Origin: Amphiscolops sp. MND2022
Lineage: Eukaryota
Assembly (NCBI GenBank): GCA_964187785.1
Contig: OZ076416.1
Location: 38,874,001-38,938,000, forward strand
DNA: 64,000 nucleotides
Reading direction: 5' to 3'
Under the pieces are notes generated by a model. It saw only the letters and a list, made by a program, of their open reading frames with translations, searched no databases and was not told the DNA's origin. Positions 5,648 through 48,703 of the stretch are shown piece after piece. Positions within the stretch are counted from its first letter, which is position 1. Each line of letters begins with the position of its first letter. The position numbers and the translations under genes are program-made.

Positions 5648-8600
5648 TGAGTTAGACTTGCACAGATGGACTCAGTTCATACGTTTTTCGATTGGAGGCA
5701 ATGACTGACAGTTCACTAGCATACATCTCAGAGAATCTGGTCAAATGGCTTCAACTTCACCTTCCCTCTATTGGTAATAGAGTTTTAGAATTCGTGTACG
5801 ACAAACTTGACTTTAGTTTCTGGGTGGATTATATGATTCCTTCTGGATACAATGTTCCAATGTTCTCACGTAGCCAATCAGCCGGAAATGGAAATTTTTC
5901 GATATGGAAACGATAATCGAATGTTTGGAGAATGTGGCTGCGAGCAAAACTGATTCGTGAAAAGAGGATTTGTCGAAGTAAGAAGTTGAAGTTGAAGTTG
6001 TAAATGACGCTTTTTTAACACTCAAAGCGTTCAAAATGGGTATGTCTTTAATCGTGCTCATGGTAGTGAGTTCCCTAATTCGGCACCTGATACCCAGAAG
6101 CATCGTTTTCCATAGGTATTGTTGGTAATTCTGACAGTCCATTTCGTTCCCTGGAATTTCTCAGATCGTACTGATCAAGTTGCCGATACCTGAAAAACGG
6201 TACCGACAAGTGAATCGGTACAGGCAAGTCATTATAAAGACGGTATACGAAGCATAAGATTTTGTACTTAGTTCTTTGTTCAACAGGAAGCAAACGAAGT
6301 TCATTCAGAAGTAAGTTAACATTAGAATTTCCTTGATGAAGAAGGAGGCATGCTGCTCTATTCTGAACTCTTTGCAATTTTTTGATCATGTAGTCCGGAG
6401 CACCATTTAACAGTGAGTTAAAATAATCAAGTCTACTGATAACGAAAGTGAGACTCGATTACTTTGTGAGATCGCATGACAAATATTTTCGAATTGATGT
6501 TATCCTTCTGAGGTGATAGTAGGACTTCGCACAGGTGCTGTTGATGGAAGAAGAGAAACCTAACTTGTTATCCAAAGTAACTCCCTAAATTTTTGACACT
6601 ATCTTTGATCTCAATTCTGATCCCATCGATTGTGATTGTCTCGGGAAGGCTGATTCTTTGATTCGTAACGAACATACATTAAGTTTTTGAACTGTTTACT
6701 TTGAATTTCAAGGCGGCCAATAGTTTCAAAACACTGGCAATTATGTTTTTATGTTTCAAGAAATTGGCAAAGGTTGTCCCCAGGTCAAATTCCAAGGAAA
6801 TCGTTATGTCACCGGCATAGATGTGATAACTAGCAAAAAAATTCATTAAGTAGAGACCTCAAAGTGCGTAAGTATAGAATGAAGAGCACTGGCCCTAAGA
6901 TCGATCCTTGAGGAACAACTGTTTCGATAGATGTACCCTCAGAGTAGCTTCCATCAATGAGGACACATTGTATTCGACCATTCAGGTAGGATTTTATCAA
7001 GGAATGCGCCTGGCCAATAATCCCAATTTGAGATATAATCGACCGAAGTATTTCATGATCCACGGTGTCGAACGCTGCGGATAGATCTGAGGATATCACC
7101 AGAAATGTACTCTTGTTGTTCAGGCCCCATAGGAGATTTTAAGTTGGGTCTAATAACGCTGTCTCTGTTGAATGATATTTCCTATACGCAGATTGATGCT
7201 CGTCAAGTACTGCATGTTTATCCAAAAAGCGTTTGAGTTGCAGAGCAATGGCCTTTTCAATAACTTTGGAAGCGAAATGCAAATTCGTGTTTGGTCTGTA
7301 GTTTGTTAGTTCTTCGATGTCACCACTTTTAAAAATTGGTATGACTATCCCATGTTTGAAGGCAGTGGGGAAGACGGCATTAAGGAAAGACTCCTTGATA
7401 ATCTCAGATACCTGGTTATCGAAAAATGAAACTTCTTCAAAATTCTGAAAGGCACATTTTGACTAGGTTGACGTTTCGACGACACTTGATTGCTAACAAG
7501 CACTACATATAAGTTATCAACGTTTTCGAAGGTTTCCAGAAAGTCTCCAGAAGCCGGGATTTTCAAGTCTTCTAAACCCGGCGGAATGTTTCCAAGATTA
7601 TTCTGAATTTTGGATGAGAAAAAATCATTGAATTTGTTTGCTAATGGCACTCGGGGAAAGACCGAAGGTAGAGTTTGCTTCTTTTTAGATCCAAGGAGGG
7701 TTTTAATAGCCGCGAATTTCAGCTTCGACGTATCAGCATCACTAAGTTTCTTCTCCAAAAACCTAGAACGTTTTTAATGAAACAGCTTGAAGTAGTTTTC
7801 TGTCGCAATTTGCTTGTGTAGTCTATCGATGGTGGACGGCATTTTTCTGAATAAATTTTCCAATTGACGCTGTTTCCTCTCACATGCTCTCAGTTCATTA
7901 TCGTAAAAAGGGCAATCGTGTTTCGAGATAACTCTTTCCATTTCTGGAGCATGTTGGTCACTTATTGTTTGAGTTAGACTTGCACAGATGGACTCAGTTC
8001 ATACGTTTTTCGATTGGAGGCAATGACTGACAGTTCACTAGCATACATCTCAGAGAATCTGGTCAAATGGCTTCAACTTCACCTTCCCTCTATTGGTAAT
8101 AGAGTTTTAGAATTCGTGTACGACAAACTTGACTTTAGTTTCTGGGTGGATTATATGATTCCTTCTGGATACAATGTTCCAATGTTCTCACGTAGCCAAT
8201 CAGCCGGAAATGGAAATTTTTCGATATGGAAACGATAATCGAATGTTTGGAGAATGTGGCTGCGAGCAAAACTGATTCGTGAAAAGAGGATTTGTCGAAG
8301 TAAGAAGTTGAAGTTGAAGTTGTAAATGACGCTTTTTTAACACTCAAAGCGTTCAAAATGGGTATGTCTTTAATCGTGCTCATGGTAGTGAGTTCCCTAA
8401 TTCGGCACCTGATACCCAGAAGCATCGTTTTCCATAGGTATTGTTGGTAATTCTGACAGTCCATTTCGTTCCCTGGAATTTCTCAGATCGTACTGATCAA
8501 GTTGCCGATACCTGAAAAACGGTACCGACAAGTGAATCGGTACAGGCAAGTCATTATAAAGACGGTATACGAAGCATAAGATTTTGTACTTAGTTCTTTG

Positions 8601-9925
8601 TTCAACAGGAAGCAAACGAAGTTCATTCAGAAGTAAGTTAACATTAGAATTTCCTTGATGAAGAAGGAGGCATGCTGCTCTATTCTGAACTCTTTGCAAT
8701 TTTTTGATCATGTAGTCCGGAGCACCATTTAACAGTGAGTTAAAATAATCAAGTCTACTGATAACGAAAGTGAGACTCGATTACTTTGTGAGATCGCATG
8801 ACAAATATTTTCGAATTGATGTTATCCTTCTGAGGTGATAGTAGGACTTCGCACAGGTGCTGTTGATGGAAGAAGAGAAACCTAACTTGTTATCCAAAGT
8901 AACTCCCTAAATTTTTGACACTATCTTTGATCTCAATTCTGATCCCATCGATTGTGATTGTCTCGGGAAGGCTGATTCTTTGATTCGTAACGAACATACA
9001 TTAAGTTTTTGAACTGTTTACTTTGAATTTCAAGGCGGCCAATAGTTTCAAAACACTCTTGTACTCTTGTTGTTCAGGCCCCATAGGAGATTTTAAGTTG
9101 GGTCTAATAACGCTGTCTCTGTTGAATGATATTTCCTATACGCAGATTGATGCTCGTCAAGTACTGCATGTTTATCCAAAAAGCGTTTGAGTTGCAGAGC
9201 AATGGCCTTTTCAATAACTTTGGAAGCGAAATGCAAATTCGTGTTTGGTCTGTAGTTTGTTAGTTCTTCGATGTCACCACTTTTAAAAATTGGTATGACT
9301 ATCCCATGTTTGAAGGCAGTGGGGAAGACGGCATTAAGGAAAGACTCCTTGATAATCTCAGATACCTGGTTATCGAAAAATGAAACTTCTTCAAAATTCT
9401 GAAAGGCACATTTTGACTAGGTTGACGTTTCGACGACACTTGATTGCTAACAAGCACTACATATAAGTTATCAACGTTTTCGAAGGTTTCCAGAAAGTCT
9501 TCAGAAGCCGGGATTTTCAAGTCTTCTAAACCCGGCGGAATGTTTCCAAGATTATTCTGAATTTTGGATGAGAAAAAATCATTGAATTTGTTTGCTAATG
9601 GCACTCGGGGAAAGACCGAAGGTAGAGTTTGCTTCTTTTTAGATCCAAGGAGGGTTTTAATAGCCGCGAATTTCAGCTTCGACGTATCAGCATCACTAAG
9701 TTTCTTCTCCAAAAACCTAGAACGTTTTTAATGAAACAGCTTGAAGTAGTTTTCTGTCGCAATTTGCTTGTGTAGTCTATCGATGGTGGACGGCATTTTT
9801 CTGAATAAATTTTCCAATTGACGCTGTTTCCTCTCACATGCTCTCAGTTCATTATCGTAAAAAGGGCAATCGTGTTTCGAGATAACTCTTTCCATTTCTG
9901 GAGCATGTTGGTCACTTATTGTTTG
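5648..9925. repeat. 2,322-bp tandem duplication (5648-7969, copy 2 from 7970); copy 2 has a net 368-bp deletion
   Basis: Identical ORFs at offset 2322 (5692/8014, 6075/8397) and at offset 1954 after the deletion (7345/9299). TGA microhomology at the junction. Copy 2 lacks 6736-7105, which is replaced by 2 filler nt at 9058-9059. Confidence 0.95.
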
Positions 9926-10380
9926 AAGGGCTCCCAAGAAGCTGTCAATCAGAGGACACCCTACGATAGACCACAGGTGCTAAAAACAATCTTCATTGAA
10001 ATCTACTTGGTTATCATATTTCCAATTTTTGAAATTGACAACGGATCTTTCACGATTTTCGATAAGAAATTTTAAGCAGTCGAAATATAACAAATCGTGA
10101 TCCGATGTGGGGACACTAACAAGAAATAATTCAACCTTTTGTGGTACAATGACAAGATCAAGAGTGTTACCACATTTATGAGTATGTAGTTCAACTGACT
10201 GTACCAGTCCAAACTCATCGAGAATATTTTTAAAATCAGTCGAAGCTGGACATATTCGATTGACTTGAATATTGACATCGCCACAACAGAAGATGTATTC
10301 AAACGAAAATTTCACAAGTAAGCCATGAAACTCTTCAAGAAAGAGTTGCAAGTTTCCAAAAGGTCGACGATAGCAGCAGA
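5982..10380 (-). pseudogene. L2/CR1-type LINE ORF2 (AP endonuclease + RT), degraded and partly tandem-duplicated
   Basis: Endonuclease motifs GDVN, THKCGNTLDL and SDH (9980-10351). RT motifs DLSAAFDTVDH and VPQGSILGPVLFILY (6830-7099). L2-typical C-terminus IKKLQRVQNRAACLL (6075-6389). (GAAGTT)3 tail-like repeat at ~5982-6000. Confidence 0.85.
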
Positions 10381-10904: not shown

Positions 10905-11095
10905 TAGGAACAGAATAAGACCTAAATCGACAACGGGAATAAGACCAAAAGTAAAATTCATTTTCCAGGAGTAAGCCATAAAAATTTAGGTCTTATTCCT
11001 ACTTTTTGGAAAAAGACCTATTAGCGAAATAAAACCTGAAAACGACAAAAAGTGGGAATTAGACCTAAAAACGGGAATAAGACCTAAATGAGGAA
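10905..11095 (+). repeat. Array of GGAATAAGACCTAAA-like units (MITE subterminal repeats)
   Basis: Several aataagacc(t)aaa units and inverted taggtcttattcc units; related units at ~23865-23915. Confidence 0.55.
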
Positions 11096-11222
11096 TGACA
11101 CCCCTGGAAGAACAGGGGGGTCTTTAAAGGAATAATATGTGAAGTTTTTGAAGTATGAAACGTGCCTCTGATATTTTCCCATTTCCTCTAGTGCCCTGTG
11201 GCTCTTGGGGTCGCTTATGTTC

Positions 11223-11422
11223 NNNNNNNNNNNNNNNNNNNNNNNNNNNNNNNNNNNNNNNNNNNNNNNNNNNNNNNNNNNNNNNNNNNNNNNNNNNNNN
11301 NNNNNNNNNNNNNNNNNNNNNNNNNNNNNNNNNNNNNNNNNNNNNNNNNNNNNNNNNNNNNNNNNNNNNNNNNNNNNNNNNNNNNNNNNNNNNNNNNNNN
11401 NNNNNNNNNNNNNNNNNNNNNN
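11223..11422. other. Assembly gap (200 N)
   Basis: A run of exactly 200 N, a round placeholder length typical of scaffold joins. Confidence 0.99.
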
Positions 11423-11754
11423 GCCGCCCCCCCCTCCAAAGCGGCGAAGGCCCAAAACGCCTATAGATATAGTGGTTTTCAGCAAACACACCACAAAAGC
11501 ATGCAAAAGTGTACTCGAAACGGCCCCTTTTTGAACCCCTCAAACCAGGGCGATGACCAAAACAAAAAAAAGATAAACATCCAGAAACGACGAAAAGTGC
11601 ACCGCCAAAACGCCATTTTCAACATCAGGTAGAATGCTGAAACCACTGTAAACGTAGCCCGAATAACGCATGGTCGGAATTTTAACATCAAATTTGGCCA
11701 GGATTTTAACTTTGAAATCGGCCAAACTTGGCCAGGACTTTAACTCTACAAAAT

Positions 11755-11812
11755 GTATATATGTATGTATGTATGTCTGTATGCATGTCTGTATGTATGT
11801 CTGAATGTATGT
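11755..11812. repeat. (TATG)n-like microsatellite running into the second gap
   Basis: tatatatgtatgtatgtatgtctgtatgcatgtctgtatgtatgt directly before the Ns. Confidence 0.9.
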
Positions 11813-11943
11813 NNNNNNNNNNNNNNNNNNNNNNNNNNNNNNNNNNNNNNNNNNNNNNNNNNNNNNNNNNNNNNNNNNNNNNNNNNNNNNNNNNNNNNNN
11901 NNNNNNNNNNNNNNNNNNNNNNNNNNNNNNNNNNNNNNNNNNN
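11813..11943. other. Assembly gap (131 N)
   Basis: Run of 131 N. Confidence 0.99.
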
Positions 11944-12450
11944 CGCGTTGTATTCTTATAAAGACAGATGTGCAACAACTACCCTGCAAAATTGATATCC
12001 CTTGTTGTTCTTGCGATTCTCTTCTACTACTCTGAATTGCTGTCTCTATGAGCCCAAACGCCTTCTTTTAAAAGGGAACTCGCGGGGGAGAACTTCTGGG
12101 GAAATCCGACATGCCTGATAAGTTCCGAAGCGTCTGAAACAATATCGCCCCTTAGTTGTTGCCCTTTGGTTTTGTCTATCAGCTGTTCTCAAGTCGTTGT
12201 TGCGCTCTTGTTTTTTCTCGACAGATCAATTATAAGTTCTTGCATTCCATCATGAGGTGAAAAGGAAAATGATCGACATTTGTTTAAGTTTCCACGGCGC
12301 CTGCTCCCCTTAAGACGATGATATGAAAGGGGTGAGGTCTGGACTTGTAACGGGCAAATCGTTGGAGCCCAGAAAAAGGGAATGTCGACAAAATGTCCGA
12401 AAGATGTCGAGAAAAAATGTCCGAAAAATGTCCAAAAACTGTCCGGAGGG

Positions 12451-12727
12451 TTGCGAACCAGAGCGCCTGGGAGAGGGGTCGAAAATAGGAAAATCCCCGA
12501 GAGTGGTTAGGAGAGGGTGCAAAAGGTCTTCTGGACCCACAGCGCAAAGGTCTCCCAAGAGTCTCTTGCACCATGTGCAACCCTGTTTTGCACCGGCGCA
12601 AGCCCAGGTTGCACCGGTGCAAGAGGCTGTTTGCTCCCTCGGTTCAAAAGACCTTTTGCCCCCTCTCCTAACCTCTTTCGGGGATTGTCCTATTTTTGAT
12701 CCCTCTCCCAGGCACTCTGGTTTGCGA
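12451..12727. mobile_element. ~277-bp foldback element with ~90-bp arms, flanked by an 8-bp direct repeat
   Basis: Left arm ttgcgaaccagagcgcctgggagagggg...aaaaggtctt mirrors right arm aagaccttttg...ctctcccaggcactctggtttgcga. CCGGAGGG occurs at 12443-12450 and 12728-12735. Confidence 0.75.
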
Positions 12728-13315
12728 CCGGAGGGGCTGTTTGCCCGCAATTCTGGGGCCGGAAATGGCTGCGCCAATTTTATGGGCGCCTGGAAAAAAT
12801 GCATTCTTTCTGCAGGGAAGACCCATGCCCCAAAAATTCCTCGTTTCAGGGGGGGGGTATTTTGGGTGATGGGAGGGGGGGAAGTGCCGATTTTATTTTT
12901 ATGGGCGCGAGGATTTTTTCTGATTTCTTCGGACTTTCACATTGTGGGTGTAGAAGTTGGGGGTGGTAGTCAGGCAAGAAAAGGCACATGAACTTTTAAC
13001 GCAAAAGCCTTTTGAGAAGGCGGTTAACCCCTGGACAACCTGCCGGTTAACCAGAAGAAAGTGCTTATTCTGATTTTCGGACACTTTTTGGACAATTTTT
13101 TGCCTATTTGGTCAATACTTTTGTTTGGTGACCCTGTCCACTGCTCGCCCGTTACAAGTCTGGACCTTAAAGGCAAAAATCCTGACCTTTGAAAGAGCCC
13201 AAATCAGCAAGCGGCGCTTGAAGGTGTGCCCCTGTTCTTTAGAGGACGGCGGACGGCAAACGTGCAACAACTAACGTGCAAAATGGTTTGGTCTTTTTCT
13301 TTTTATTAGAACGGG

Positions 13316-13459
13316 AAGAACTTGGGCCATAGCGGGGCTCGTATAAATAAATCCCTCTTTCTTCTGAATTCGGGCCGTTTTTTCCCTAGAAAATAGGGAA
13401 ATTCAGTTCTGAACTTTGGTTCGCGTAAAACGGTCTAAATCGCTATGGCCCAAGTTCTT
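13316..13459. mobile_element. 144-bp MITE with perfect 19-bp TIR
   Basis: AAGAACTTGGGCCATAGCG (13316-13334) / CGCTATGGCCCAAGTTCTT (13441-13459). Confidence 0.8.
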
Positions 13460-13760
13460 TCCTCTCTAACTTTATTCTACAAAAAGAGCCTCAATTTTAA
13501 GAAAAGTCCTGAGGGAAAAATTCTGAAAAAGTGTGGAAAAGTGCAATTTTAAAAAGTGTGAAAAAGTGCCGAAACGATTTTGCTCTTTAGTTGTTGCCCT
13601 TTAGTTTTTCTCTGATGTTCTAGCACCGCATCGACGCAGAAGCCCATCCACAAGCTGGCATTTGCCAAGAGATTTGCTCACCCTACCCCCAATCCTCAGG
13701 CTGGGCAAAGGCGCTTGGCTTTGGCTGACGGGCACGTGCGCTCCCTCCAAATCTAGGGCG

Positions 13761-13977
13761 GAACTAAAAGGGACAAACTGAAATCTAAAATGGGACAAAC
13801 CGGTTTTCTGCGAAAATCTGCGGTTTTCTGCGAAAATCTGCTGTTTCCTGTGGTTTTCTGCGAAAATCTTCGCCTCCGAGATGCTATAATTCCAAGGAAG
13901 AGCGAAGATCTGCAAGAAACAGCGAAAAACTGCGAGTTCGGCTCGGTTTGTCCCATTTAGCTTGTCCCTTTTAATTC
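13761..13977. mobile_element. 217-bp MITE with bipartite TIR
   Basis: GAACTAAAAGGGACAA / TTGTCCCTTTTAATTC (15 of 16 match), plus inner AAATGGGACAAACCG / CGGTTTGTCCCATTT. Internal ggttttctgcgaaaatct repeats. Confidence 0.8.
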
Positions 13978-14086
13978 CCCTTGAAAATCAGCTCTTCACA
14001 GGTGCTGGGGCCTTCTGGGATTTCTGGCGTATCTGAGAGCCTAACCCGGAACAAGCAACCAGGGGAATTTGGCCTATGCTCAGGAC

Positions 14087-14299
14087 CGGAAAAAGGGGTC
14101 ATTACGAAAGGGGTCTTTTCACTGGAGAAGTCTCTGGAATCTCTAAAATCTCTAAAATCTCTAGAAAATGGTTGGACTCTCCTTTCTTTTCCAAAGTCTG
14201 GGGGTTCTCTAGAAACTCTAGTATCTCTAAATTCTCTAGAATCTCTTGAAAATGGACTTTTCTGAAAAGACCCCTTTTCCAAAAGACCCCTTTTTTCCG
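14087..14299. mobile_element. ~213-bp MITE with internal TCTCTA(G/A)AA repeats
   Basis: CGGAAAAAGGGGTC..AAAGGGGTCTTTTC / GAAAAGACCCCTTT..GACCCCTTTTTTCCG. Confidence 0.7.
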
Positions 14300-17286
14300 A
14301 ACCCGATGTGCGGGGGTTGGCAAAGTTTTGTTTGAGGGTGAGAGAACCTCGAAAAATATCGGAAAGCAGCGCAGACTTTGATCCGAGAAACTGCGCGACT
14401 TTGGCGCGGATTTTTGAGAGCCTTCTCTCCCTGCCCCATAAATCCACACCAGAGTCCCCAACTTTTTGTTGGCGATTTTCTGCTAGCTCGACCTTGGTTT
14501 GTGTCGCGCAAAGCAAGAACCAGCTATGTTTCCTTCGAGACAGTATCGCAGAGGGGGGGTATCGCACGTGCTTTGCCTTGTTTTCAAATGGTATCGCGCA
14601 AGCATCACTGAGATACCCCTCTGGGGGGGGGGAATCGCACCTCAAGCGCGCATGCTGGGGCGAGGGGTATTGCACCCGATTTGGCCATGTTGAGACAGTC
14701 AAAACTCCATAGCGCCCAATAGGGGGGTATCGCTGAGATAGTCTTGCGGTAGCGTGCAATACGGGGCCACTAAGATTGGCTGTAGGGAGAGGTATTGACT
14801 CTCATTCTTAGCACAACAAAATCGCGCAATTGCAATCATTAGCGACTTGGCATCACCATAGGCAGATCACAGGAGTCTCTGCAGAAAGCAGTACTTCTAG
14901 GCTTGGGCATCGCAGCTCAAAATCGACATCGTTAGCAGCTTTCCATCGTATCCTTCAATCGCAATGTGGTTTTGCATCAACTGTTGGGCTGCCAGAGGTG
15001 GCAGAGTCGCGTGGCGGATTTTTTTTGTTATTTTTGGGCCGTTTTCTCAAAACGAACGCTTTTGACTAAAACTGTTGTCTGGCAGGGTGCGCAGCAAACC
15101 TTGTCCATCCCACCAGCAGCAGCTGAGGGATTGCAGGTGCATTTCAGCATGGGAGCCTCGACCATGCCCAAGGCAGCCAAAGAGTGTCCCAGAATCCATG
15201 CTCTGAAGACACCTCCAAGAGCAATCCTTCTCAATCGAAAAAAACGCGGCGTGTACTTGGAGGTTTGACAGGCGGATTTGTTGGTAGGTTTTGCGGCGGA
15301 TTTTTGGGCCTGGCTGGCGGATTTCGGGGGGGTTGTGCGCCGGCGGATTTTTTGTTTTCGGCTGGCGGATTTTCCGGCGGATTTCTTCGGCGGATTTTTC
15401 TTTTGCATTTTGCGGCCAAAAAATCCGCCGCAAAAATCCACCGAAAAATCCAGCACTTCCATGGCAATCTTTTGGCAGATTTTCCACCGTAGGCTGAACC
15501 CCAGACCGGCCATGAGCAAATTCCAAGTTTGGCACTGGAACCCTCCCTGAAATTGGAACTAGGTTTGTCTGTCCATTCTTTTTTGCCACGTCTAAGGAAT
15601 TCCTGGAGCATTGGCAACCGCTCCACTGGAAAATCCCAAGACAGGCAGGTTTCAAGCCTCACAGGCTGGCAGGACAAGAGATTGCGCACTCGAAGGCCAG
15701 AAGGCGGCCAGAAATATACACATCAAAGACAAGGATGGCACCACCAAATTCATTGCAAGTTTGGAGGGCAGGCGATTAAAATTAAACAATCGAAAAATCC
15801 CCAGAAAATCGTCTCTGCTGAAATGGCAGCCTAATCAACTGTCTTGTGACAATCTCAGATGTCCTCACGCGATTCCTGGGCTCTGCGGTGGCCATCTCAA
15901 AAGAAAATCACGTGACTTGCGTACCATTGGGGACGAAAACATTACCTAATTAATTCGCAAACGATTTAGGTAAGGCAATTTTGTGGGTAATTCAAGACTA
16001 ATTCCCCTAGTACTTCTCTTTAGTAGACCAAGAAACCATGTAATTACCTAAAAGAATTCGTCTGGAATAAGAGTTAGGTAGGTAATAGTTTTGTCTCCAA
16101 TGGTATGCAAAGTTCTTATTATTGTCTACGCATCCTCTGTGAAGCACTTTCCAGGAATCCCTTCTTACAACCAGCCTCACAAGGCCAGCTTCTCTCGGGC
16201 ACGGATCTGAGCGTTTGCGCGAAGAAATCGTTTTCCAAATACTAAATGCTTTTAATACTTCCGACCTCGTCTCGCAACTTTTTTTGGAGTCCGGAGAAGG
16301 GGTGGATTTCGCAGGGGGTGTTGTTGCAATAGTTTTCTTCTGGCGCAATAGTTCGTGCATTAGTCATGCGATGCAATAGTTCGCGATGGTAGAAAAACTT
16401 TGGCATTCTTTCTGCTGTTTCGAGCGGGATAGTTCGTTTGCAATAAATTCGTGCCCCTTCTCCAAACGCCCGAGTTTTGCCAAAAGGTTTTTTTTTAGAC
16501 AGGGGCCGCGCATTTCGCGTCAGGGCGGTTTCCTGCGAAACGTGCAAATCTCTTTGCGCGAATCGGCCATCTGACGAACCAACTCTGCTTTCTGAAAGCC
16601 TTTGCAACAAGCCTCCTTCGAAGAGCACTCCTAGTAGTAAGAGAACTTGCAAGAAGCATTTCTAAGAACCGCTAGGTGTACAACTATGGAAGCCTTTTGT
16701 GTGTCTATTCAAAGGAAATAACGCAGAAATCAAAGGAAAGTGACGCCGATTAGCAGTAACAAGCTGAGAGCACCAAAAATCACAATCGCAAATCGCTGCG
16801 ATTTTCTGTCGCAAAGTCCCTGTCGCCGGCCACACCCCAGTGTGGATATTTTTTCGAACAATCGCGACAAGAATCGCAATCAAGGAAAAATCGCAAGGCT
16901 TTCTGCGGGGGAAAGACACTTTGGGGGCCCACAAATCGCCGCGATTTTTTTGCCTGCGTCAGAAAATCGCAATTGCAGAGATTAGGTGCGTCCAATTGGC
17001 AGGTTATTTTGGTACGACATTCCTGCGTTTTCCCAGGTTAGCTGCCCAAATTTGTGATATAGGGAACCGTCAAAACGTTAATGCCCGCTAGTGCCCGTTA
17101 ACACCCATTAATGCCCGTTAATGGCTGTGAACTCGCTGTTAGCCAAAATTACGTTACAAAAAAAAACTGACAATTGGATACACCTAACAGAAAGATCGCA
17201 ACACTTTGTGCACTCAGGTAACAAGCTGGGGACAAAAGAGGCTTCCATAAGGTTACATTCAGGATCGGTCTGAAAATAAGGAGGGG

Positions 17287-17543
17287 AAAAGTGCCATAAA
17301 TCTAAGTAATTTAGCCAAACTTTTTAACATAAATAAATGGCTTTTTGGCCCCGGGCCATTTATTTATGTTAGGCCGGTTGGCGGTCCCCGGCCATTTATT
17401 TATGTTCGGCCGGTTGGCAGTCCCGAAAACACTTCAATCATTGGGGAAAACTCCTAAATAATCTGACGTGACCCCCCGCGGGACCCTCACCCTAACAGCC
17501 CCCGCGGGGTTTTTTTGTCCAAAAACTATTTATGGCACATTTT
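17287..17543. mobile_element. ~257-bp MITE
   Basis: AAAAGTGCCATAAAT / ATTTATGGCACATTTT termini. Internal duplicated ggccattt(att)tatgtt.ggccggttggc block. Confidence 0.6.
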
Positions 17544-17958
17544 TGGCTCTGACACTTAGGTTGTCTCCTGATCTTATCTTTTCGTAGGCGAAGCCTCAAC
17601 CACCTTTGCCAGCCCTCTCAGCAGAGCGGCATCTGCAAGGGCAATCCTCCGCCTCAGTCACACAAAAGCTTGGGGCACCCCCCTCCCAGAATCTCGCGGT
17701 GAAAGAATTGTGTTTCGTCTCTCGTGGAAAATGTGGAGGATTTTTCGTGAAATTTCTTGCAGCCACTTTTCCAGGAAATTCAAGGGCGAAAATCTGCAAA
17801 ATTTTTCGCCAAATTTTCGCTGCGTTTTTCGCCCGCGTCCGCGAAAAATTTCGCACGAATTTCGCTCTCAGGAAATTCCTTCATAACAAAAGCTCGACAC
17901 GTCATCACCACGTAAATTTCGAACTTCCTTCCCAAAGGACCCTTCTGTACTTGTGAGT

Positions 17959-20900
17959 ACTGCAGGAGACATTAGATATTTGGCAAGACGAATTCTCCAT
18001 TACCGAACTAGAGAAAGCTTTGAAAACTGTCAAAAGCAGCTCGTTCGACAACGATCTCATCCATCCCAAATTGTTGCAAAAGTGGGGACATAATACCAAG
18101 TTGGCAGTTCTTGATTTATTCAATATGTGTTGGACAAAATCAATTCGGCCATGGGGAACTTCAAAGATCATTTTCATCACGAAAACTGGTAAGAGCGCTT
18201 ATGACATTGCATCAAGCTTTCGACCCCTATCAATAACAAGCCACATTGGGAAGTTGTTCGAAAGATTGATCGAGCGACGACTCCGTACCTTCCTTGAGGA
18301 AGAAAGTATCATCGAAGAAGAATAAGAAGGGTTTCAAAGAGGAAAGAACACGCTTAGATCCCTCTACAGACTCGATCTCGAATGTGAATGGGCAAGAACG
18401 CATGAGGAATCTGCTGCACTTCTAAACGTTGACATTGAAAAAGCATTCGACAGTGTGTGGCTTGATGGCTTGATCTACAAATTGAAGAACCTGAAAATCA
18501 ATGGGAAAATGATAAAAATGATCGACGTCTTCCTTCGTTCCAGAAAAGGACAGATTCGCCTAGATCCTTACACCTCACCCCTCTTCGGTATCCATATTGG
18601 ACTACCAGAAGGAAGCGTTCTCTCCCCTGTGCTATTTATTATTTTCATCTCTGATTTTTTATCCAACTCAATGAAATGCTTTAAATTTGCCGACGATTCT
18701 TCAGTACTTCTATCCGGACAGAAAATTACTGAATCGTTAAAGGACACCTGCTCAGATATAGAAATGTGGTGTAGACGCTGGAGAATGGCTGTAAACGGGT
18801 CAAAAACCGAAATTTTGCCTTTAACCAACTCACACGAAGATTTTACGCAGATCAAACTGAACGGAGAAAACGGCAAAATTAGCGAAACCACGAAATCACT
18901 TGGACATACTGAAGTCTCAGTTGCCAAAGTTACGCGAAACTGGCATATCCTCCGAAAACATTGCAGCTCAAAGTGGGGCTTCACCATTCCGACCCTAGTC
19001 TATCTTTACCGATCTGTCATACAACCCCAAGTTTTATATGGAGCACCAATATGGGCACAAAAGAACATCAAATCACTACAATTCTTCCAAAACAATATCC
19101 TGAGATCGATCTTCAAAAATTGTTTATCGCCACCTATTAGTACAGCTGAAGCTCTCATAGGGATCCCACCAATCGACCTCTTCTGCCAAAGTCTAGCAGT
19201 CAAATTTTTATTCAAAGCAAACCAAAAAACGACCTAATTCAAGCAATCCACAAGAAATTTGTGACCCAGTAAATTGGAATGATGACCCCGAGTGCTGCTG
19301 GAGATCACTTAAAGGCATAATGACGGAAGCTACGAATCTCTACATTCCGACAAAACGAACCAATAGAAACAGCAAGCCGTTCTGGAACGAGGAACTCAGC
19401 AAAGCCAGTAATGAATTAAGAGCCTTGAGGCGCATTTTCAAATACAACTCCAACTTCCGAAACGGTCAACATCTAGCACAAGCTAGAGATCATTTCAGAA
19501 AATTACTGTCAGAGAGCGCAACAACATGGATGAGTAAGATTTTAGCCGAAATGGGACATAAACACGGAAAACAGTTCTAGTCAATTTACAATAGGCCTTT
19601 CAAAAGAAAAACCTGCGAGATGGGCCCTATCAAAGACTCCAAAAGAAAATTGCTCTGTGAATATAAGAATATTGCCGAACATTTGAAACAGACTTTCTCT
19701 GAAGCCGTCCACTTAAAAAACCACAGATTCGACGAAGATCATCGTCAAAAAATAGAGAAGTATCTGCAAACGGAAGTCAGTATCTCACTGCAGGAGACAT
19801 TAGATATTTGGCAAGACGAATTCTCCATTACTGAACTGGAGAAAGCTTTGAAAACTGTCAAAAGCAGCTCGTTCGACAACGATCTCATCCATCCCAAATT
19901 GTTGCAAAAGTGGGGACATAATACCAAGTTGGCAGTTCTTGATTTATTCAATATGTGTTGGACTAAATCAATTTTGCCTTTAACCAACTCACACGAAGAT
20001 TTTACGCAGATCAAACTGAACGGAGAAAACGGCAAAATTAGCGAAACCACGAAATCACTTGGACATACTGAAGTCTCAGTTGCCAAAGTTACGCGAAACT
20101 GGCATATCCTCCGAAAACATTGCAGCTCAAAGTGGGACTTCACCATTCCGACCCTAGTCTATCTTTACCGATCTGTCATACAACCCCAAGTTTTATATGG
20201 AGCACCAATATGGGCACAAAAGAACATCAAATCACTACAATTCTTCCAAAACAATATCCTGAGATCGATCTTCAAAAATTGTTTATCGCCACCTATTAGT
20301 ACAGCTGAAGCTCTCACAGGGATCCCATCAATCGACCTCTTCTGCCAAAGTCTAGCAGTCAAATTTTTATTCAAAGCAAACCAAAAAACGACCTAATTCA
20401 AGCAATCCACAAGAAATTTGTGACCCAGTAAATTGGAATGATGACCCCGAGTGCTGCTGGAGATCACTTAAAGGCATAATGACGGAAGCTACGAATCTCT
20501 ACATTCCGACAAAACGAACCAATAGAAACAGCAAGACGTTCTGGAACGAGGAACTCAGCAAAGCCAGTAATGAATTAAGAGCCTTGAGGCGCATTTTCAA
20601 ATACAACTCCAACTTCCGAAACGGTCAACATCTAGCACAAGCTAGAGATCATTTCAGAAAATTACTGTCAGAGAGCGCATCAACATGGATGAGTAAGATT
20701 TTAGCCGAAATTGGACATAAACACGGAAAACAGTTCTGGTCAATTTACAATAGGCTTTTCAAAAGAAAAACCTGCGAGATGGGCCCTATCAAAAACTCCA
20801 AAGGAAAATTGCTCTGTGAATATAAGAATTTTGCCGAACATTTGAAACAGACTTTCTTTGAAGCCGTCCACTTAAAAAACCACAGATTCGACGCAGATCA

Positions 20901-22070
20901 TCGTCAAAAAATAGAGAAGTATCTGCAAACGGAAGTCAGTATCTCACTGCAGGAGACATTAGATATTTGGCAAGACGAATTCTCCATTACTGAACTGGAG
21001 AAAGCTTTGAAAACTGTCAAAAGCAGCTCGTTCGACAACGATCTCATCCATCCCAAATTGTTGCAAAAGTGGGGACATAATACCAAGTTGGCAGTTCTTG
21101 ATTTATTCAATATGTGTTGGACTAAATCAATTTTGCCTTTAACCAACTCACACGAAGATTTTACGCAGATCAAACTGAACGGAGAAAACAGCAAAATTAG
21201 CGAAACCACGAAATCACTTGGACATACTGAAGTCTCAGTTGCCAAAGCTACGCGAAACTGGCATATCCTCCGAAAACATTGCAGCTCAAAGTGGGGCTTC
21301 ACCATTCCGACCCTAGTCTATCTTTACCGATCTGTCATACAACCCCAAGTTTTATATGGAGCACCAATATGGGCACAAAAGAACATCAAATCACTACAAT
21401 TCTTCCAAAACAATATCCTGAGATCGATCTTCAAAAATTGTTTATCGCCACCTACTAGTACAGCTGAAGCTCTCACAGGGATCCCACCAATCGACCTCTT
21501 CTGCCAAAGTCTAGCAGTCAAATTTTTATTCAAAACAAAGCAAAAAACGACCTAAGTCAAGCAATCCACAACCAAGCATTAACCCAAAATCGCAGCAATA
21601 GTTGCGTCTTCAAAAGTTTCTGGAGAAGTCATTGCAAAGTGACCAATACAACCGAAATTGGTTACACCCCTGAGTCGATATCCGCATTTCTAAATACTTT
21701 ATGGCTAAACCGTTGGAAAAGTCCACTGACCGATGTCTTCCTAAAGAATTTCATTCACTCGAAACCCGCTGTTGGTAAACCCTGTCCAATTATTAGGGGA
21801 AATCCCTTTTATGCAAACTGCAACTGCAGCCTCCTGATGGCCAACACGACGATATTCATTGAATTCAAATGGAAGTTAAGCAAATGTGCCTCACCGAAAT
21901 GCTCATGCGGTGATGAAGACAACGCATACCACTATTTCCTTGTCTGCAGCAATTTCTCTGCTATCCGTCCAAACAAAATTGCCCTCCTTGACATCTTCGA
22001 CGATACCGACAGCAAAATATTGAAAGAATTCATCGATTCCAGCAAAATACTCGAAGAACCTTACCCGTGA
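17959..22070 (+). pseudogene. LINE (I/Jockey-like) ORF2 RT region, rearranged into a tandem array
   Basis: RT motifs FRPLSITSHIGKLFE, DIEKAFDSVW, GLPEGSVLSPVLF and FKFADD in the first unit (18020-19237). C-terminal CSCG..H..C knuckle (ASPKCSCGDEDNAYHYFLVC) ending at the 22070 stop. Confidence 0.85.
19254..21571 (+). repeat. Two 1,159-bp tandem units (19254-20412, 20413-21571) of an RT-core-deleted LINE segment
   Basis: ORFs recur at offset 1159 (19320/20479, 19745/20904, 20165/21324) with scattered SNPs. In these units MCWTKSI joins directly to LPLTNSHED through an AATT microhomology, removing the RT core. Confidence 0.92.
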
Positions 22071-48061: not shown

Positions 48062-48703
48062 CTACTCAATCTCCAGGAAACCGCCCCTCTCGGCAAGCTT
48101 CCGCAGCTGAGCCGCCCGCTCTTGCATAGACCATACAGAATAGAGACGCATCCACTGTCCCCGCTCAAAACCAGTGAGTTGAGCATAGCCACGGATATAT
48201 GCTCGTAATTGGAAAATGACCATCTCCCCTATGGGTGACAGCAGAGTTCCCTCCCACCTGGCTCCCCAGTTTGCCCGGAGGAAACTAATCAAAGGGTTAG
48301 GAATGGGCGCTACAGGAACAGCGAATCCCGGTGTTCCCCGAAGAGAACTCGCTATATTCGCCCAATTTTCCAGCCTGTCTATATCTCTCATAGTAAAGAG
48401 ATTCAAGAAGTGTTGGAGGCTGGAGTCCTCCAAACTCCCCTGAGCCATGGTGACAGACCCAGCCTGCGGGGCTACAGTACCCACAAGCGACCCAGAAGAC
48501 GCAGGTGCAGCGCGGGCTCCAGATGATGAAGTAGTAGACGAGCCCCCACGAGCTCCAGCGGACGACGACTGCCCAGCCACGGAAGGCCTCACAGAAGACG
48601 AAGACGTCCCACTAGCCGACACTACACCAGTAGAGGAGGACCCCGCAGATGTAGTGGACGCGGAAGTTGAAGGGCCACCTCCTTGCTCCTCATCCGTTGT
48701 TGC
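48062..48703 (-). CDS. Antisense accessory ORF (Ser/Gly/Thr-rich N-terminus, ~120-aa Trp-containing domain); start uncertain (first ATG at 48448)
   Basis: 214 stop-free codons in a GC-richer block with sharp AT-rich borders. Globular-looking C-terminus LQHFLNLF...RANWGARWEG...GQWMRLYSVW. Confidence 0.55.
   Translation of the reverse strand, partial: ATTDEEQGGGPSTSASTTSAGSSSTGVVSASGTSSSSVRPSVAGQSSSAGARGGSSTTSSSGARAAPASSGSLVGTVAPQAGSVTMAQGSLEDSSLQHFLNLFTMRDIDRLENWANIASSLRGTPGFAVPVAPIPNPLISFLRANWGARWEGTLLSPIGEMVIFQLRAYIRGYAQLTGFERGQWMRLYSVWSMQERAAQLRKLAERGGFLEIE

What the first reader, a model, noticed from the sequence alone, without database searches (positions are those of the whole stretch)
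11944..17958. Alien 6-kb island with dinoflagellate-like exon/intron grammar, joined without a gap to host-type DNA
Seen: higher GC, a repeat vocabulary absent elsewhere in the window, and 30-70-nt exon-like pieces bounded by AG|G acceptors and AG|GT or AG|GC donors. Four to five of these chain in frame: AEPQ...KLEL-GIPGALATAPLENPKT-GQKAARNIHIKDKDGTTKFIASLE-DVLTRFLGSAVAISK. The left side abuts N gaps, while the right side joins a LINE at ~17959 with no gap. Known: dinoflagellate genes use GC/GA donors and G-starting exons. Inference: symbiont or prey DNA chimerically assembled at a contig end, or a true horizontal insertion.
Basis: partly seen in the sequence, partly recalled or inferred. Interest (0 to 1): 0.72.

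Follow-up and report, generated by a model that had tools for sequence, protein, structure and literature searches.

The report
Symbiont DNA stuck on host contig end
A 6.5-kb stretch of non-coding, repeat-rich DNA of dinoflagellate-symbiont type forms the very end of an assembled contig in an animal chromosome scaffold, so it is most likely an assembly chimera and not a gene transfer; its "exons" are no more than chance.

Summary
The island is real as a foreign-looking block. GC is 47% against about 39% in the flanks. Its 5-mer composition switches sharply at about 11.2-11.4 kb and at 17,959. Its repeat families are absent from the rest of the window.

In the 1.07-Gb assembly these families lie almost only on 15-47-kb unplaced contigs of GC 45-52%. 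Those contigs form one repeat-sharing network with contigs that carry peridinin-chlorophyll-protein genes and the dinoflagellate spliced leader. The LINE to the right of 17,959 sits on chromosome scaffolds C1-C13.

Public runs of two other organisms cover the whole island part at 90% likeness or more. They have zero depth on the LINE. The DNA is therefore dinoflagellate-symbiont type.

The exon grammar fails. The chain lies in a repeat whose copies are no better conserved in "exons" than in "introns" and carry frame-breaking indels. Shuffled sequence gives equal or longer chains.

The island extends left to 11,423, directly against an exactly 200-N scaffold gap. It is the terminal 6.5 kb of a contig, joined bluntly inside a LINE. 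My best reading (about 0.75) is a chimeric read or contig end. A true insertion (about 0.15) is not excluded, because no raw reads of the source sample were available. The scan had already noted dinoflagellate-type elements on other pieces of this assembly.

The parts
11223..11422 (.). Scaffold gap of exactly 200 N; marks the left end of the contig that carries the island
   Evidence: length 200; the k-mer score changes sign across it
11423..11812 (.). First 390 bases of the contig: alien-type DNA ending in a (TGTA/TGTC)n microsatellite
   Evidence: the non-microsatellite part hits only small contigs (C720 at 84%, C1811, C1585, C1193, C1140, C1029); LLR +8.9 for 11201-11600
11813..11943 (.). 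131-N masked stretch inside the contig, not an assembly gap; letters not read
   Evidence: one search listed microsatellite matches at C8:38885827-38885928, which lies inside this run
11944..17958 (.). Main body of the alien block: non-coding, made largely of MITE-like and other repeats of families found on dinoflagellate-type contigs
   Evidence: (no Pfam hit in 9 ORFs)
12436..12742 (.). Hairpin (MITE-like) element with 113-nt inverted arms; a 92% copy lies on unplaced contig C223
   Evidence: (I1)
14080..14306 (.). Family F1, a MITE-like element with terminal inverted repeats at 14090-14121 and 14263-14294
   Evidence: its conserved 22-mer occurs 35 times in 1.07 Gb, 34 of them on small contigs and 1 here
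14983..15834 (+). Repeat family that contains the 'exon chain'; copies on C1282 (82%), C1010 (76%), C673 (78%) and in an ENA metagenome contig (88%)
15493..15903 (+).
   Evidence: the C1282 copy has gaps of 11, 1 and 1 columns in pieces 1-3. Identity is 74-86% in pieces 1-3, 71-88% in the first two spacers and 86% upstream
17277..17552 (.). Family F2 with a 36-nt tandem duplication (17347-17418)
   Evidence: its 23-mer gives 66 matches, 62 on small contigs, 2 here and 2 at one other chromosomal site (C11)
17958..17959 (.). Blunt junction between alien DNA and the interior of a host LINE ORF; no microhomology
   Evidence: the two other LINE copies in the window continue 5' with LINE sequence; a contig of run X6 continues left of 17959 with that LINE sequence
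17959..21571 (+). Host LINE and a tandem array of its internally deleted derivative
   Evidence: 81-94% copies on C1-C13

Best explanation
Window 11423-17958 is non-coding, repeat-rich nuclear DNA of the dinoflagellate symbiont (Symbiodiniaceae-like) that was co-sequenced with the animal host. It is probably not part of host chromosome scaffold C8.

It forms the last 6.5 kb of an assembled contig whose remainder is host DNA. The most likely cause is one chimeric long-read molecule, symbiont fragment joined blunt to host fragment. That read became the terminal read of a contig which broke in a repeat-rich host region, with tandem duplications on the left and a LINE-derivative array on the right. 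Hi-C scaffolding then placed the contig behind a 200-N gap.

Shown: foreign composition; repeat families shared with the dinoflagellate-type contigs; absence of host repeats in the island; contig-end position; blunt junction inside a LINE.

Inferred: that the join was made in the library or the assembler, and not in the animal.

The 'exons' are chance open pieces inside a repeat element.
For: Origin:
- Among the scored matches, the island's repeats hit only unplaced contigs; none is on a chromosome scaffold apart from the island itself. The contigs whose length was read are 15-47 kb, and the unplaced-contig stretches fetched have GC 0.445-0.52.
- Exhaustive word counts give 34 of 35 and 62 of 66 matches on small contigs.
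- The same assembly holds tandem PCP genes (PF02429, 236 bits, no match in the 14 control genomes) on C579. It holds an exact 21-nt dinoflagellate spliced leader on C1301.
- The island, C579, C1301 and all 19 unplaced contigs sampled form one repeat-sharing component. The window's host parts form a separate one.
- Runs X1 and X5 (organism A, two studies) and X9 (organism C) cover all 24 island bins and have depth 0 on all 6 LINE bins. Low-depth X1 contigs match less repetitive island parts at about 96-98%.
- Published Symbiodiniaceae genome GC is 43.5-50.5% (PMC5177918).

Artefact:
- The block abuts an exactly 200-N gap.
- The left contig ends in host-type DNA.
- There is no host repeat inside the block and no alien DNA beyond the LINE.
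- The junction is blunt and lies inside a LINE ORF.
- The alien contigs sampled are about the length of single long reads, which suggests very low symbiont coverage.
Against: - No raw reads of the source sample could be laid, so nobody has counted the reads that cross 17959.
- All runs available were Logan contigs. None held more than 29% of the island's words.
- The one host-like run laid (X6) has under 1 Gb of letters, so it cannot show single-copy junctions.
- A second chromosomal occurrence of family F2 exists at C11:38341886-38341942. Its context could not be read. If it lies inside a contig at full coverage, real integrations become more plausible.
- The organisms of the runs are coded, so 'dinoflagellate' rests on PCP and spliced-leader linkage, not on a named hit to the island itself.
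Confidence: 0.75

Rival explanations
1. Genuine integration of symbiont nuclear DNA into host chromosome 8, germline or somatic. A fragment of 6.5 kb or more was joined by end-joining into, or next to, a LINE array. The left junction is lost in the assembly gap.
For: The join at 17959 lies within a contig and has no gap. Blunt joins without microhomology also arise by non-homologous end joining. A second chromosomal site with an alien family exists on C11. Large numbers of non-coding endosymbiont inserts have been reported in other animals (cockroaches, PMC13291636).
Against: A single-copy insert at host coverage, made of repeats that are very rare in the read set, should assemble through both junctions. 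Instead the contig ends exactly where the alien DNA ends. The left contig shows no alien DNA at its end. No host transposon or decay marks residence in the host. No bridging contig was listed in any run.
Confidence: 0.15
2. Native host DNA: a GC-rich host repeat cluster whose relatives happen to be unplaced because they are hard to assemble.
For: Unplaced contigs of any assembly are enriched in host repeats. Some unplaced contigs do carry the host LINE (C1662, C1310, C142).
Against: The families are linked to contigs carrying PCP genes and the dinoflagellate spliced leader. They are abundant in runs of organisms A and C that have no trace of the host LINE. Among chromosome-scale scaffolds they occur once or twice only.
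Confidence: 0.03
3. The island carries a real, spliced dinoflagellate gene.
For: Three pieces have AG|G acceptors, and two of them have GT or GC donors as used by Symbiodiniaceae (PMC5177918). An ORF over pieces 2-3 finds five predicted proteins in ENA metagenome contigs.
Against: Those five proteins are single ORF calls, none with a Pfam hit. The two whose contigs were read come from low-coverage contigs of one metagenome assembly that carry the same repeat. Paralogues are as conserved in the spacers as in the pieces, and have 11-, 1- and 1-column gaps in the pieces. Shuffles give equal or longer chains. No Pfam hit and no RNA run held the stretch.
Confidence: 0.05

Closest known systems
Cobiont (symbiont) contamination and chimeric contig ends in long-read assemblies of symbiotic animals
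   Same: Foreign DNA of the co-sequenced symbiont sits among unplaced read-length contigs. One piece is fused to a host contig end beside a scaffold gap, with a blunt junction and no host features inside.
   Different: Contaminant screens usually act on whole contigs. Here the foreign part is only 6.5 kb inside a chromosome-scale scaffold and has no protein-coding signal, so protein- or taxon-based screens would miss it.
Symbiodiniaceae nuclear repeat landscape (MITE-like elements, GC 43.5-50.5%)
   Same: GC of 47%, dense short inverted-repeat elements, and families shared with contigs that bear PCP genes and the spliced leader (PMC5177918).
   Different: No named Symbiodiniaceae sequence could be matched directly to the island. 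The best public run holds only 29% of its words, so the exact species or strain is not identified.
Endosymbiont-to-host non-coding DNA transfers (e.g. Blattabacterium inserts in cockroaches, PMC13291636; organelle-derived NUMT/NUPT inserts, from my own knowledge)
   Same: This would be non-coding symbiont DNA inside a host chromosome.
   Different: Those inserts lie within contigs, have both junctions and are shared between individuals. This one has a single junction and ends at a contig end.

Membership tests
Dinoflagellate (Symbiodiniaceae-type) nuclear DNA | Physical or repeat linkage to dinoflagellate-specific markers (peridinin-chlorophyll a-binding protein genes, 22-nt spliced leader) | tested here: met
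   PF02429 tandem genes on C579. Exact DinoSL 21-mer on C1301. C1301 shares two families directly with the island. All lie in one repeat-sharing component.
Dinoflagellate (Symbiodiniaceae-type) nuclear DNA | Composition like published Symbiodiniaceae genomes and unlike the host | tested here: met
   Island GC 47.3% and alien contigs 44.5-52%, against host about 39%. Published range 43.5-50.5%. 5-mer LLR.
Dinoflagellate (Symbiodiniaceae-type) nuclear DNA | Present in samples that lack the host genome | tested here: met
   Runs X1, X5 and X9 cover the island bins and have depth 0 on the host LINE. The organisms are coded, so they are not named.
Dinoflagellate (Symbiodiniaceae-type) nuclear DNA | Direct near-identical match of the island to a named dinoflagellate genome | not testable with these tools
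   No named dinoflagellate genome collection was available. Two metagenome pattern scans were blank.
Dinoflagellate protein-coding gene with GT/GC/GA donors and G after the acceptor | Exon chain longer than expected by chance | tested here: not met
   Strict chain of 3 on the + strand and 5 on the - strand. Shuffles give a median of 4 and a maximum of 9.
Dinoflagellate protein-coding gene with GT/GC/GA donors and G after the acceptor | Exons better conserved than introns among paralogues, with the frame kept | tested here: not met
   Identity to the C1282 copy: pieces 74%, 79%, 86%; spacers 71%, 88%; upstream 86%. Gaps of 11, 1 and 1 columns in the pieces.
Horizontal DNA transfer into the host chromosome | Both junctions with host DNA present within contigs | tested here: not met
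   Only the right junction exists. The left side is a 200-N scaffold gap.
Horizontal DNA transfer into the host chromosome | Junction supported by many independent reads or in other individuals | not testable with these tools
   Only Logan contigs of low-share runs were available, and no bridging contig was listed.
Chimeric contig end (assembly artefact) | Foreign segment terminal in its contig, shorter than a read, junction unrelated to biology of either side | tested here: met
   6.5 kb between the gap and 17959. The sibling alien contigs sampled are mostly 15-21 kb. The break is blunt and inside a LINE ORF.
Chimeric contig end (assembly artefact) | Read depth of one across the junction | not testable with these tools

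The most novel reading that the evidence does not exclude
The junction is real. A fragment of 6.5 kb or more of non-coding nuclear DNA from the dinoflagellate symbiont has been integrated into an animal host chromosome at a LINE array, with possibly a second site on C11. That would be a direct trace of ongoing symbiont-to-host nuclear DNA transfer in a photosymbiosis.
Probability: 0.12. Interest if true: 0.7.

Novelty: not a real feature. Interest (0 to 1): 0.12.

Why it matters
As read here, it matters for data quality. A chromosome-scale scaffold of a symbiotic animal contains a short stretch of symbiont DNA that has no protein-coding signal. Gene-based contaminant screens would miss it, and it could later be mistaken for horizontal transfer. 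The same assembly also holds many read-length symbiont contigs. If the junction proved real, it would be rare direct evidence of eukaryotic symbiont DNA entering an animal genome. The read-count test is cheap and worth running before the region is used or cited.

Tried and rejected
- Pfam scan of nine island ORFs of 112-262 aa: no family at E up to 0.1.
- Rfam scan of 11000-18500: only sub-threshold miRNA-like hits on the hairpin at 15361-15454, 29-33 bits against gathering scores of 70-95. Rejected as hairpin noise.
- Two metagenome-contig scans with the conserved words of families F1 and F2: no match.
- Protein search with ORF 15611-15949: five unnamed ENA ORFs without Pfam hits. The two whose contigs were read lie on 2x-4x contigs of one metagenome assembly (ERZ25074608) that carry the same repeats. 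This gives no taxon and no evidence of a gene.
The host model therefore uses the window itself, with the tested block left out.
- For the same reason the C11 site was not read. I did not try another route to those letters.
- Earlier-findings look-ups by words and by sequence added nothing on this stretch.
- LINE-mediated capture by template switching was considered. There is no poly(A) or RNA-like 3' end at 17958, and the content is a mosaic of genomic repeats rather than one transcript, so I rated it unlikely.
Full report
**What is there**

The window is G000:C8:38874001-38938000 of a 1.07-Gb assembly in 1929 contigs. GC rises from about 0.39 to 0.45-0.49 between 12 and 18 kb; the island itself is 47.3%.

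I trained a 5-mer model on about 170 kb of small unplaced contigs and compared it with a model of the rest of the window, leaving out the tested block. The log-likelihood ratio averages +11.4 in the island and -9.8 (SD 7.9) elsewhere. The sign changes lie at about 11.2-11.4 kb and 17.8-18.0 kb.

The block therefore begins at 11423, not 11944. The 390 bases at 11423-11812 hit only small contigs outside their microsatellite.

Two N-runs lie on the left. The run 11223-11422 is exactly 200 N, which I read as a scaffolding gap. From my own knowledge, 200 N is the default gap of a widely used Hi-C scaffolder. The run 11813-11943 is 131 N and is a mask, not a gap: one search returned microsatellite matches at assembly coordinates inside it. 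I did not read those letters.

**Whose DNA it is**

- Searching the island against its own assembly gave 69 matches among the 40 scored candidates. Apart from self-matches, every one lies on an unplaced contig. Those whose length was read measure 15-47 kb, and the fetched stretches have GC 0.445-0.52.
- The LINE to the right of 17959 has 81-94% copies on chromosome scaffolds C1-C13.
- Pattern counts are exhaustive. The conserved 22-mer of family F1 (window 14080-14306) occurs 35 times in the genome, 34 on small contigs and once in the island.
- The 23-mer of family F2 (17277-17552) occurs 66 times: 62 on small contigs, 2 in the island and 2 at one other chromosomal place on C11.
- The assembly contains dinoflagellate DNA. 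Tandem peridinin-chlorophyll a-binding protein genes lie on C579 (PF02429, up to 236.6 bits, none in 14 control genomes). An exact 21-nt dinoflagellate spliced leader lies on C1301.
- C1301 shares two repeat families directly with the island.
- In an all-against-all comparison the island and all 19 sampled unplaced contigs, including C579, C1301, C131 and C1910, form one connected component. The host left and right parts of the window link only to each other.
- Independent public data agree. Contigs of runs X1 and X5 (organism A, two studies) and X9 (organism C) cover all 24 island bins at 90% likeness or more. They have depth 0 in all six LINE bins. Run X6 (organism B) has both.
- Low-depth X1 contigs match the less repetitive island parts with few differences, for example 531 nt on 16286-16810 with 13 changes and 6 gaps. 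A close relative of the source genome therefore exists free of this host's LINE.
- Published Symbiodiniaceae genomes have GC 43.5-50.5% (PMC5177918).

I conclude that the block is dinoflagellate-symbiont nuclear DNA. No named match to the island itself was possible.

**The exon grammar**

Three findings count against them.

- Piece 3 has a GG donor. Piece 4 needs a CA|G acceptor and has no donor.
The + strand gives a chain of 3 and the - strand a chain of 5. In 100 dinucleotide shuffles the longest chain has a median of 4 and reaches 9.
- The pieces lie in a repeat family spanning 14983-15834, with copies on C1282, C1010 and C673. Against the C1282 copy the pieces are 74%, 79% and 86% identical, the spacers 71% and 88%, and the upstream non-coding part 86%. 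The pieces carry gaps of 11, 1 and 1 columns. Piece 4 lies outside the repeat.

No ORF has a Pfam hit. A protein search with ORF 15611-15949 found five unnamed ORFs without Pfam hits. The two whose contigs were read lie on low-coverage contigs of one ENA metagenome assembly, and those contigs carry the same repeats at GC 45-46%. No RNA run held the stretch. I treat the exon chain as chance.

**Is the join real?**

The junction is sharp. LINE homology begins at 17959. The other two LINE copies in the window continue 5' with LINE sequence, and there is no microhomology. One X6 contig continues left of 17959 with exactly that LINE sequence (table 7).

The alien block is the terminal 6.5 kb of its contig. 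The neighbouring contig ends at 11222 in host-type DNA. The surroundings are hard to assemble: a tandem duplication at 100% and 99.9% identity on the left, and an array of an internally deleted LINE derivative at 98.4-98.7% on the right.

A real single-copy insert made of repeats that are rare in the read set should assemble through both junctions. A contig that stops exactly where the alien DNA stops is what a chimeric terminal read predicts. Most of the alien contigs I sampled are 15-21 kb, about the length of one long read. Symbiont coverage therefore seems very low, and a separately assembled copy of the island is not expected; none was found.

No host transposon lies inside the block, and no alien DNA follows the LINE.

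I could not count reads across the junction. Only Logan contigs of runs holding 29% or less of the island's words were available. A true insertion therefore stays open at about 0.15. The C11 site should be inspected. Pervasive non-coding endosymbiont inserts are known in other animals (PMC13291636).

**Verdict**

- The compositional and repeat observations are confirmed.
- The exon grammar is rejected.
- Dinoflagellate-symbiont origin is supported, at about 0.93.
- An artefactual join is the best reading, at about 0.8 given that origin.

Earlier notes of this scan on other pieces of the same assembly (s1-151814, s1-151811) had already proposed dinoflagellate-type elements. I confirmed independently, through PCP genes and the spliced leader, that the assembly holds dinoflagellate contigs.

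Noticed in passing
G000:C11:38341886-38341942 (outside the window): Second chromosomal occurrence of alien repeat family F2, with two exact 23-mers 34 nt apart as in the symbiont contigs. It may be another fused symbiont piece or a real insert.
   Followed up: no
window 11813-11943: This 131-N run is a mask, not an assembly gap. A search of the assembly returned microsatellite matches at coordinates inside it.
   Followed up: partly
window 5678-9926: Host tandem duplication of about 2.3 kb: 8000-9057 equals 5678-6735 at 100%, and 9060-9926 equals 7106-7972 at 99.9%. It is either a recent duplication or an assembly stutter just before the contig end.
   Followed up: no
window 17959-21571: Tandem array of a LINE derivative. 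Units at 19787 and 20946 (spacing 1159 bp, 98.4-98.7% identical) lack a 665-bp part of the reverse-transcriptase core that the first copy keeps at 18146-18810.
   Followed up: partly
G000:C579:1-15179 (L018, L019): A 15-kb unplaced contig holds seven PCP-domain matches: three two-domain open frames of 401-439 aa plus a domain at the contig start. This is a dinoflagellate tandem gene array inside an animal assembly.
   Followed up: partly
window 48201-48600: The only host-part window with a strongly alien-like 5-mer score (+19.3). It lies in the GC-rich interior of the Gypsy element noted by others and shares no repeat with the alien contigs. It is probably a compositional false positive.
   Followed up: partly
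L038, L039 (ENA assembly ERZ25074608, contigs ctg136384 and ctg93162): Low-coverage metagenome contigs of GC 45-46% carry the same repeat families as the island, up to 88-93% identical over 178-598 bp. This independent data set contains the same or a related symbiont.
   Followed up: partly
window 15361-15454: An 88%-complementary hairpin built from GGCGGATTTTT-type repeats gives sub-threshold miRNA-family hits (29-33 bits against gathering scores of 70-95).
   Followed up: no
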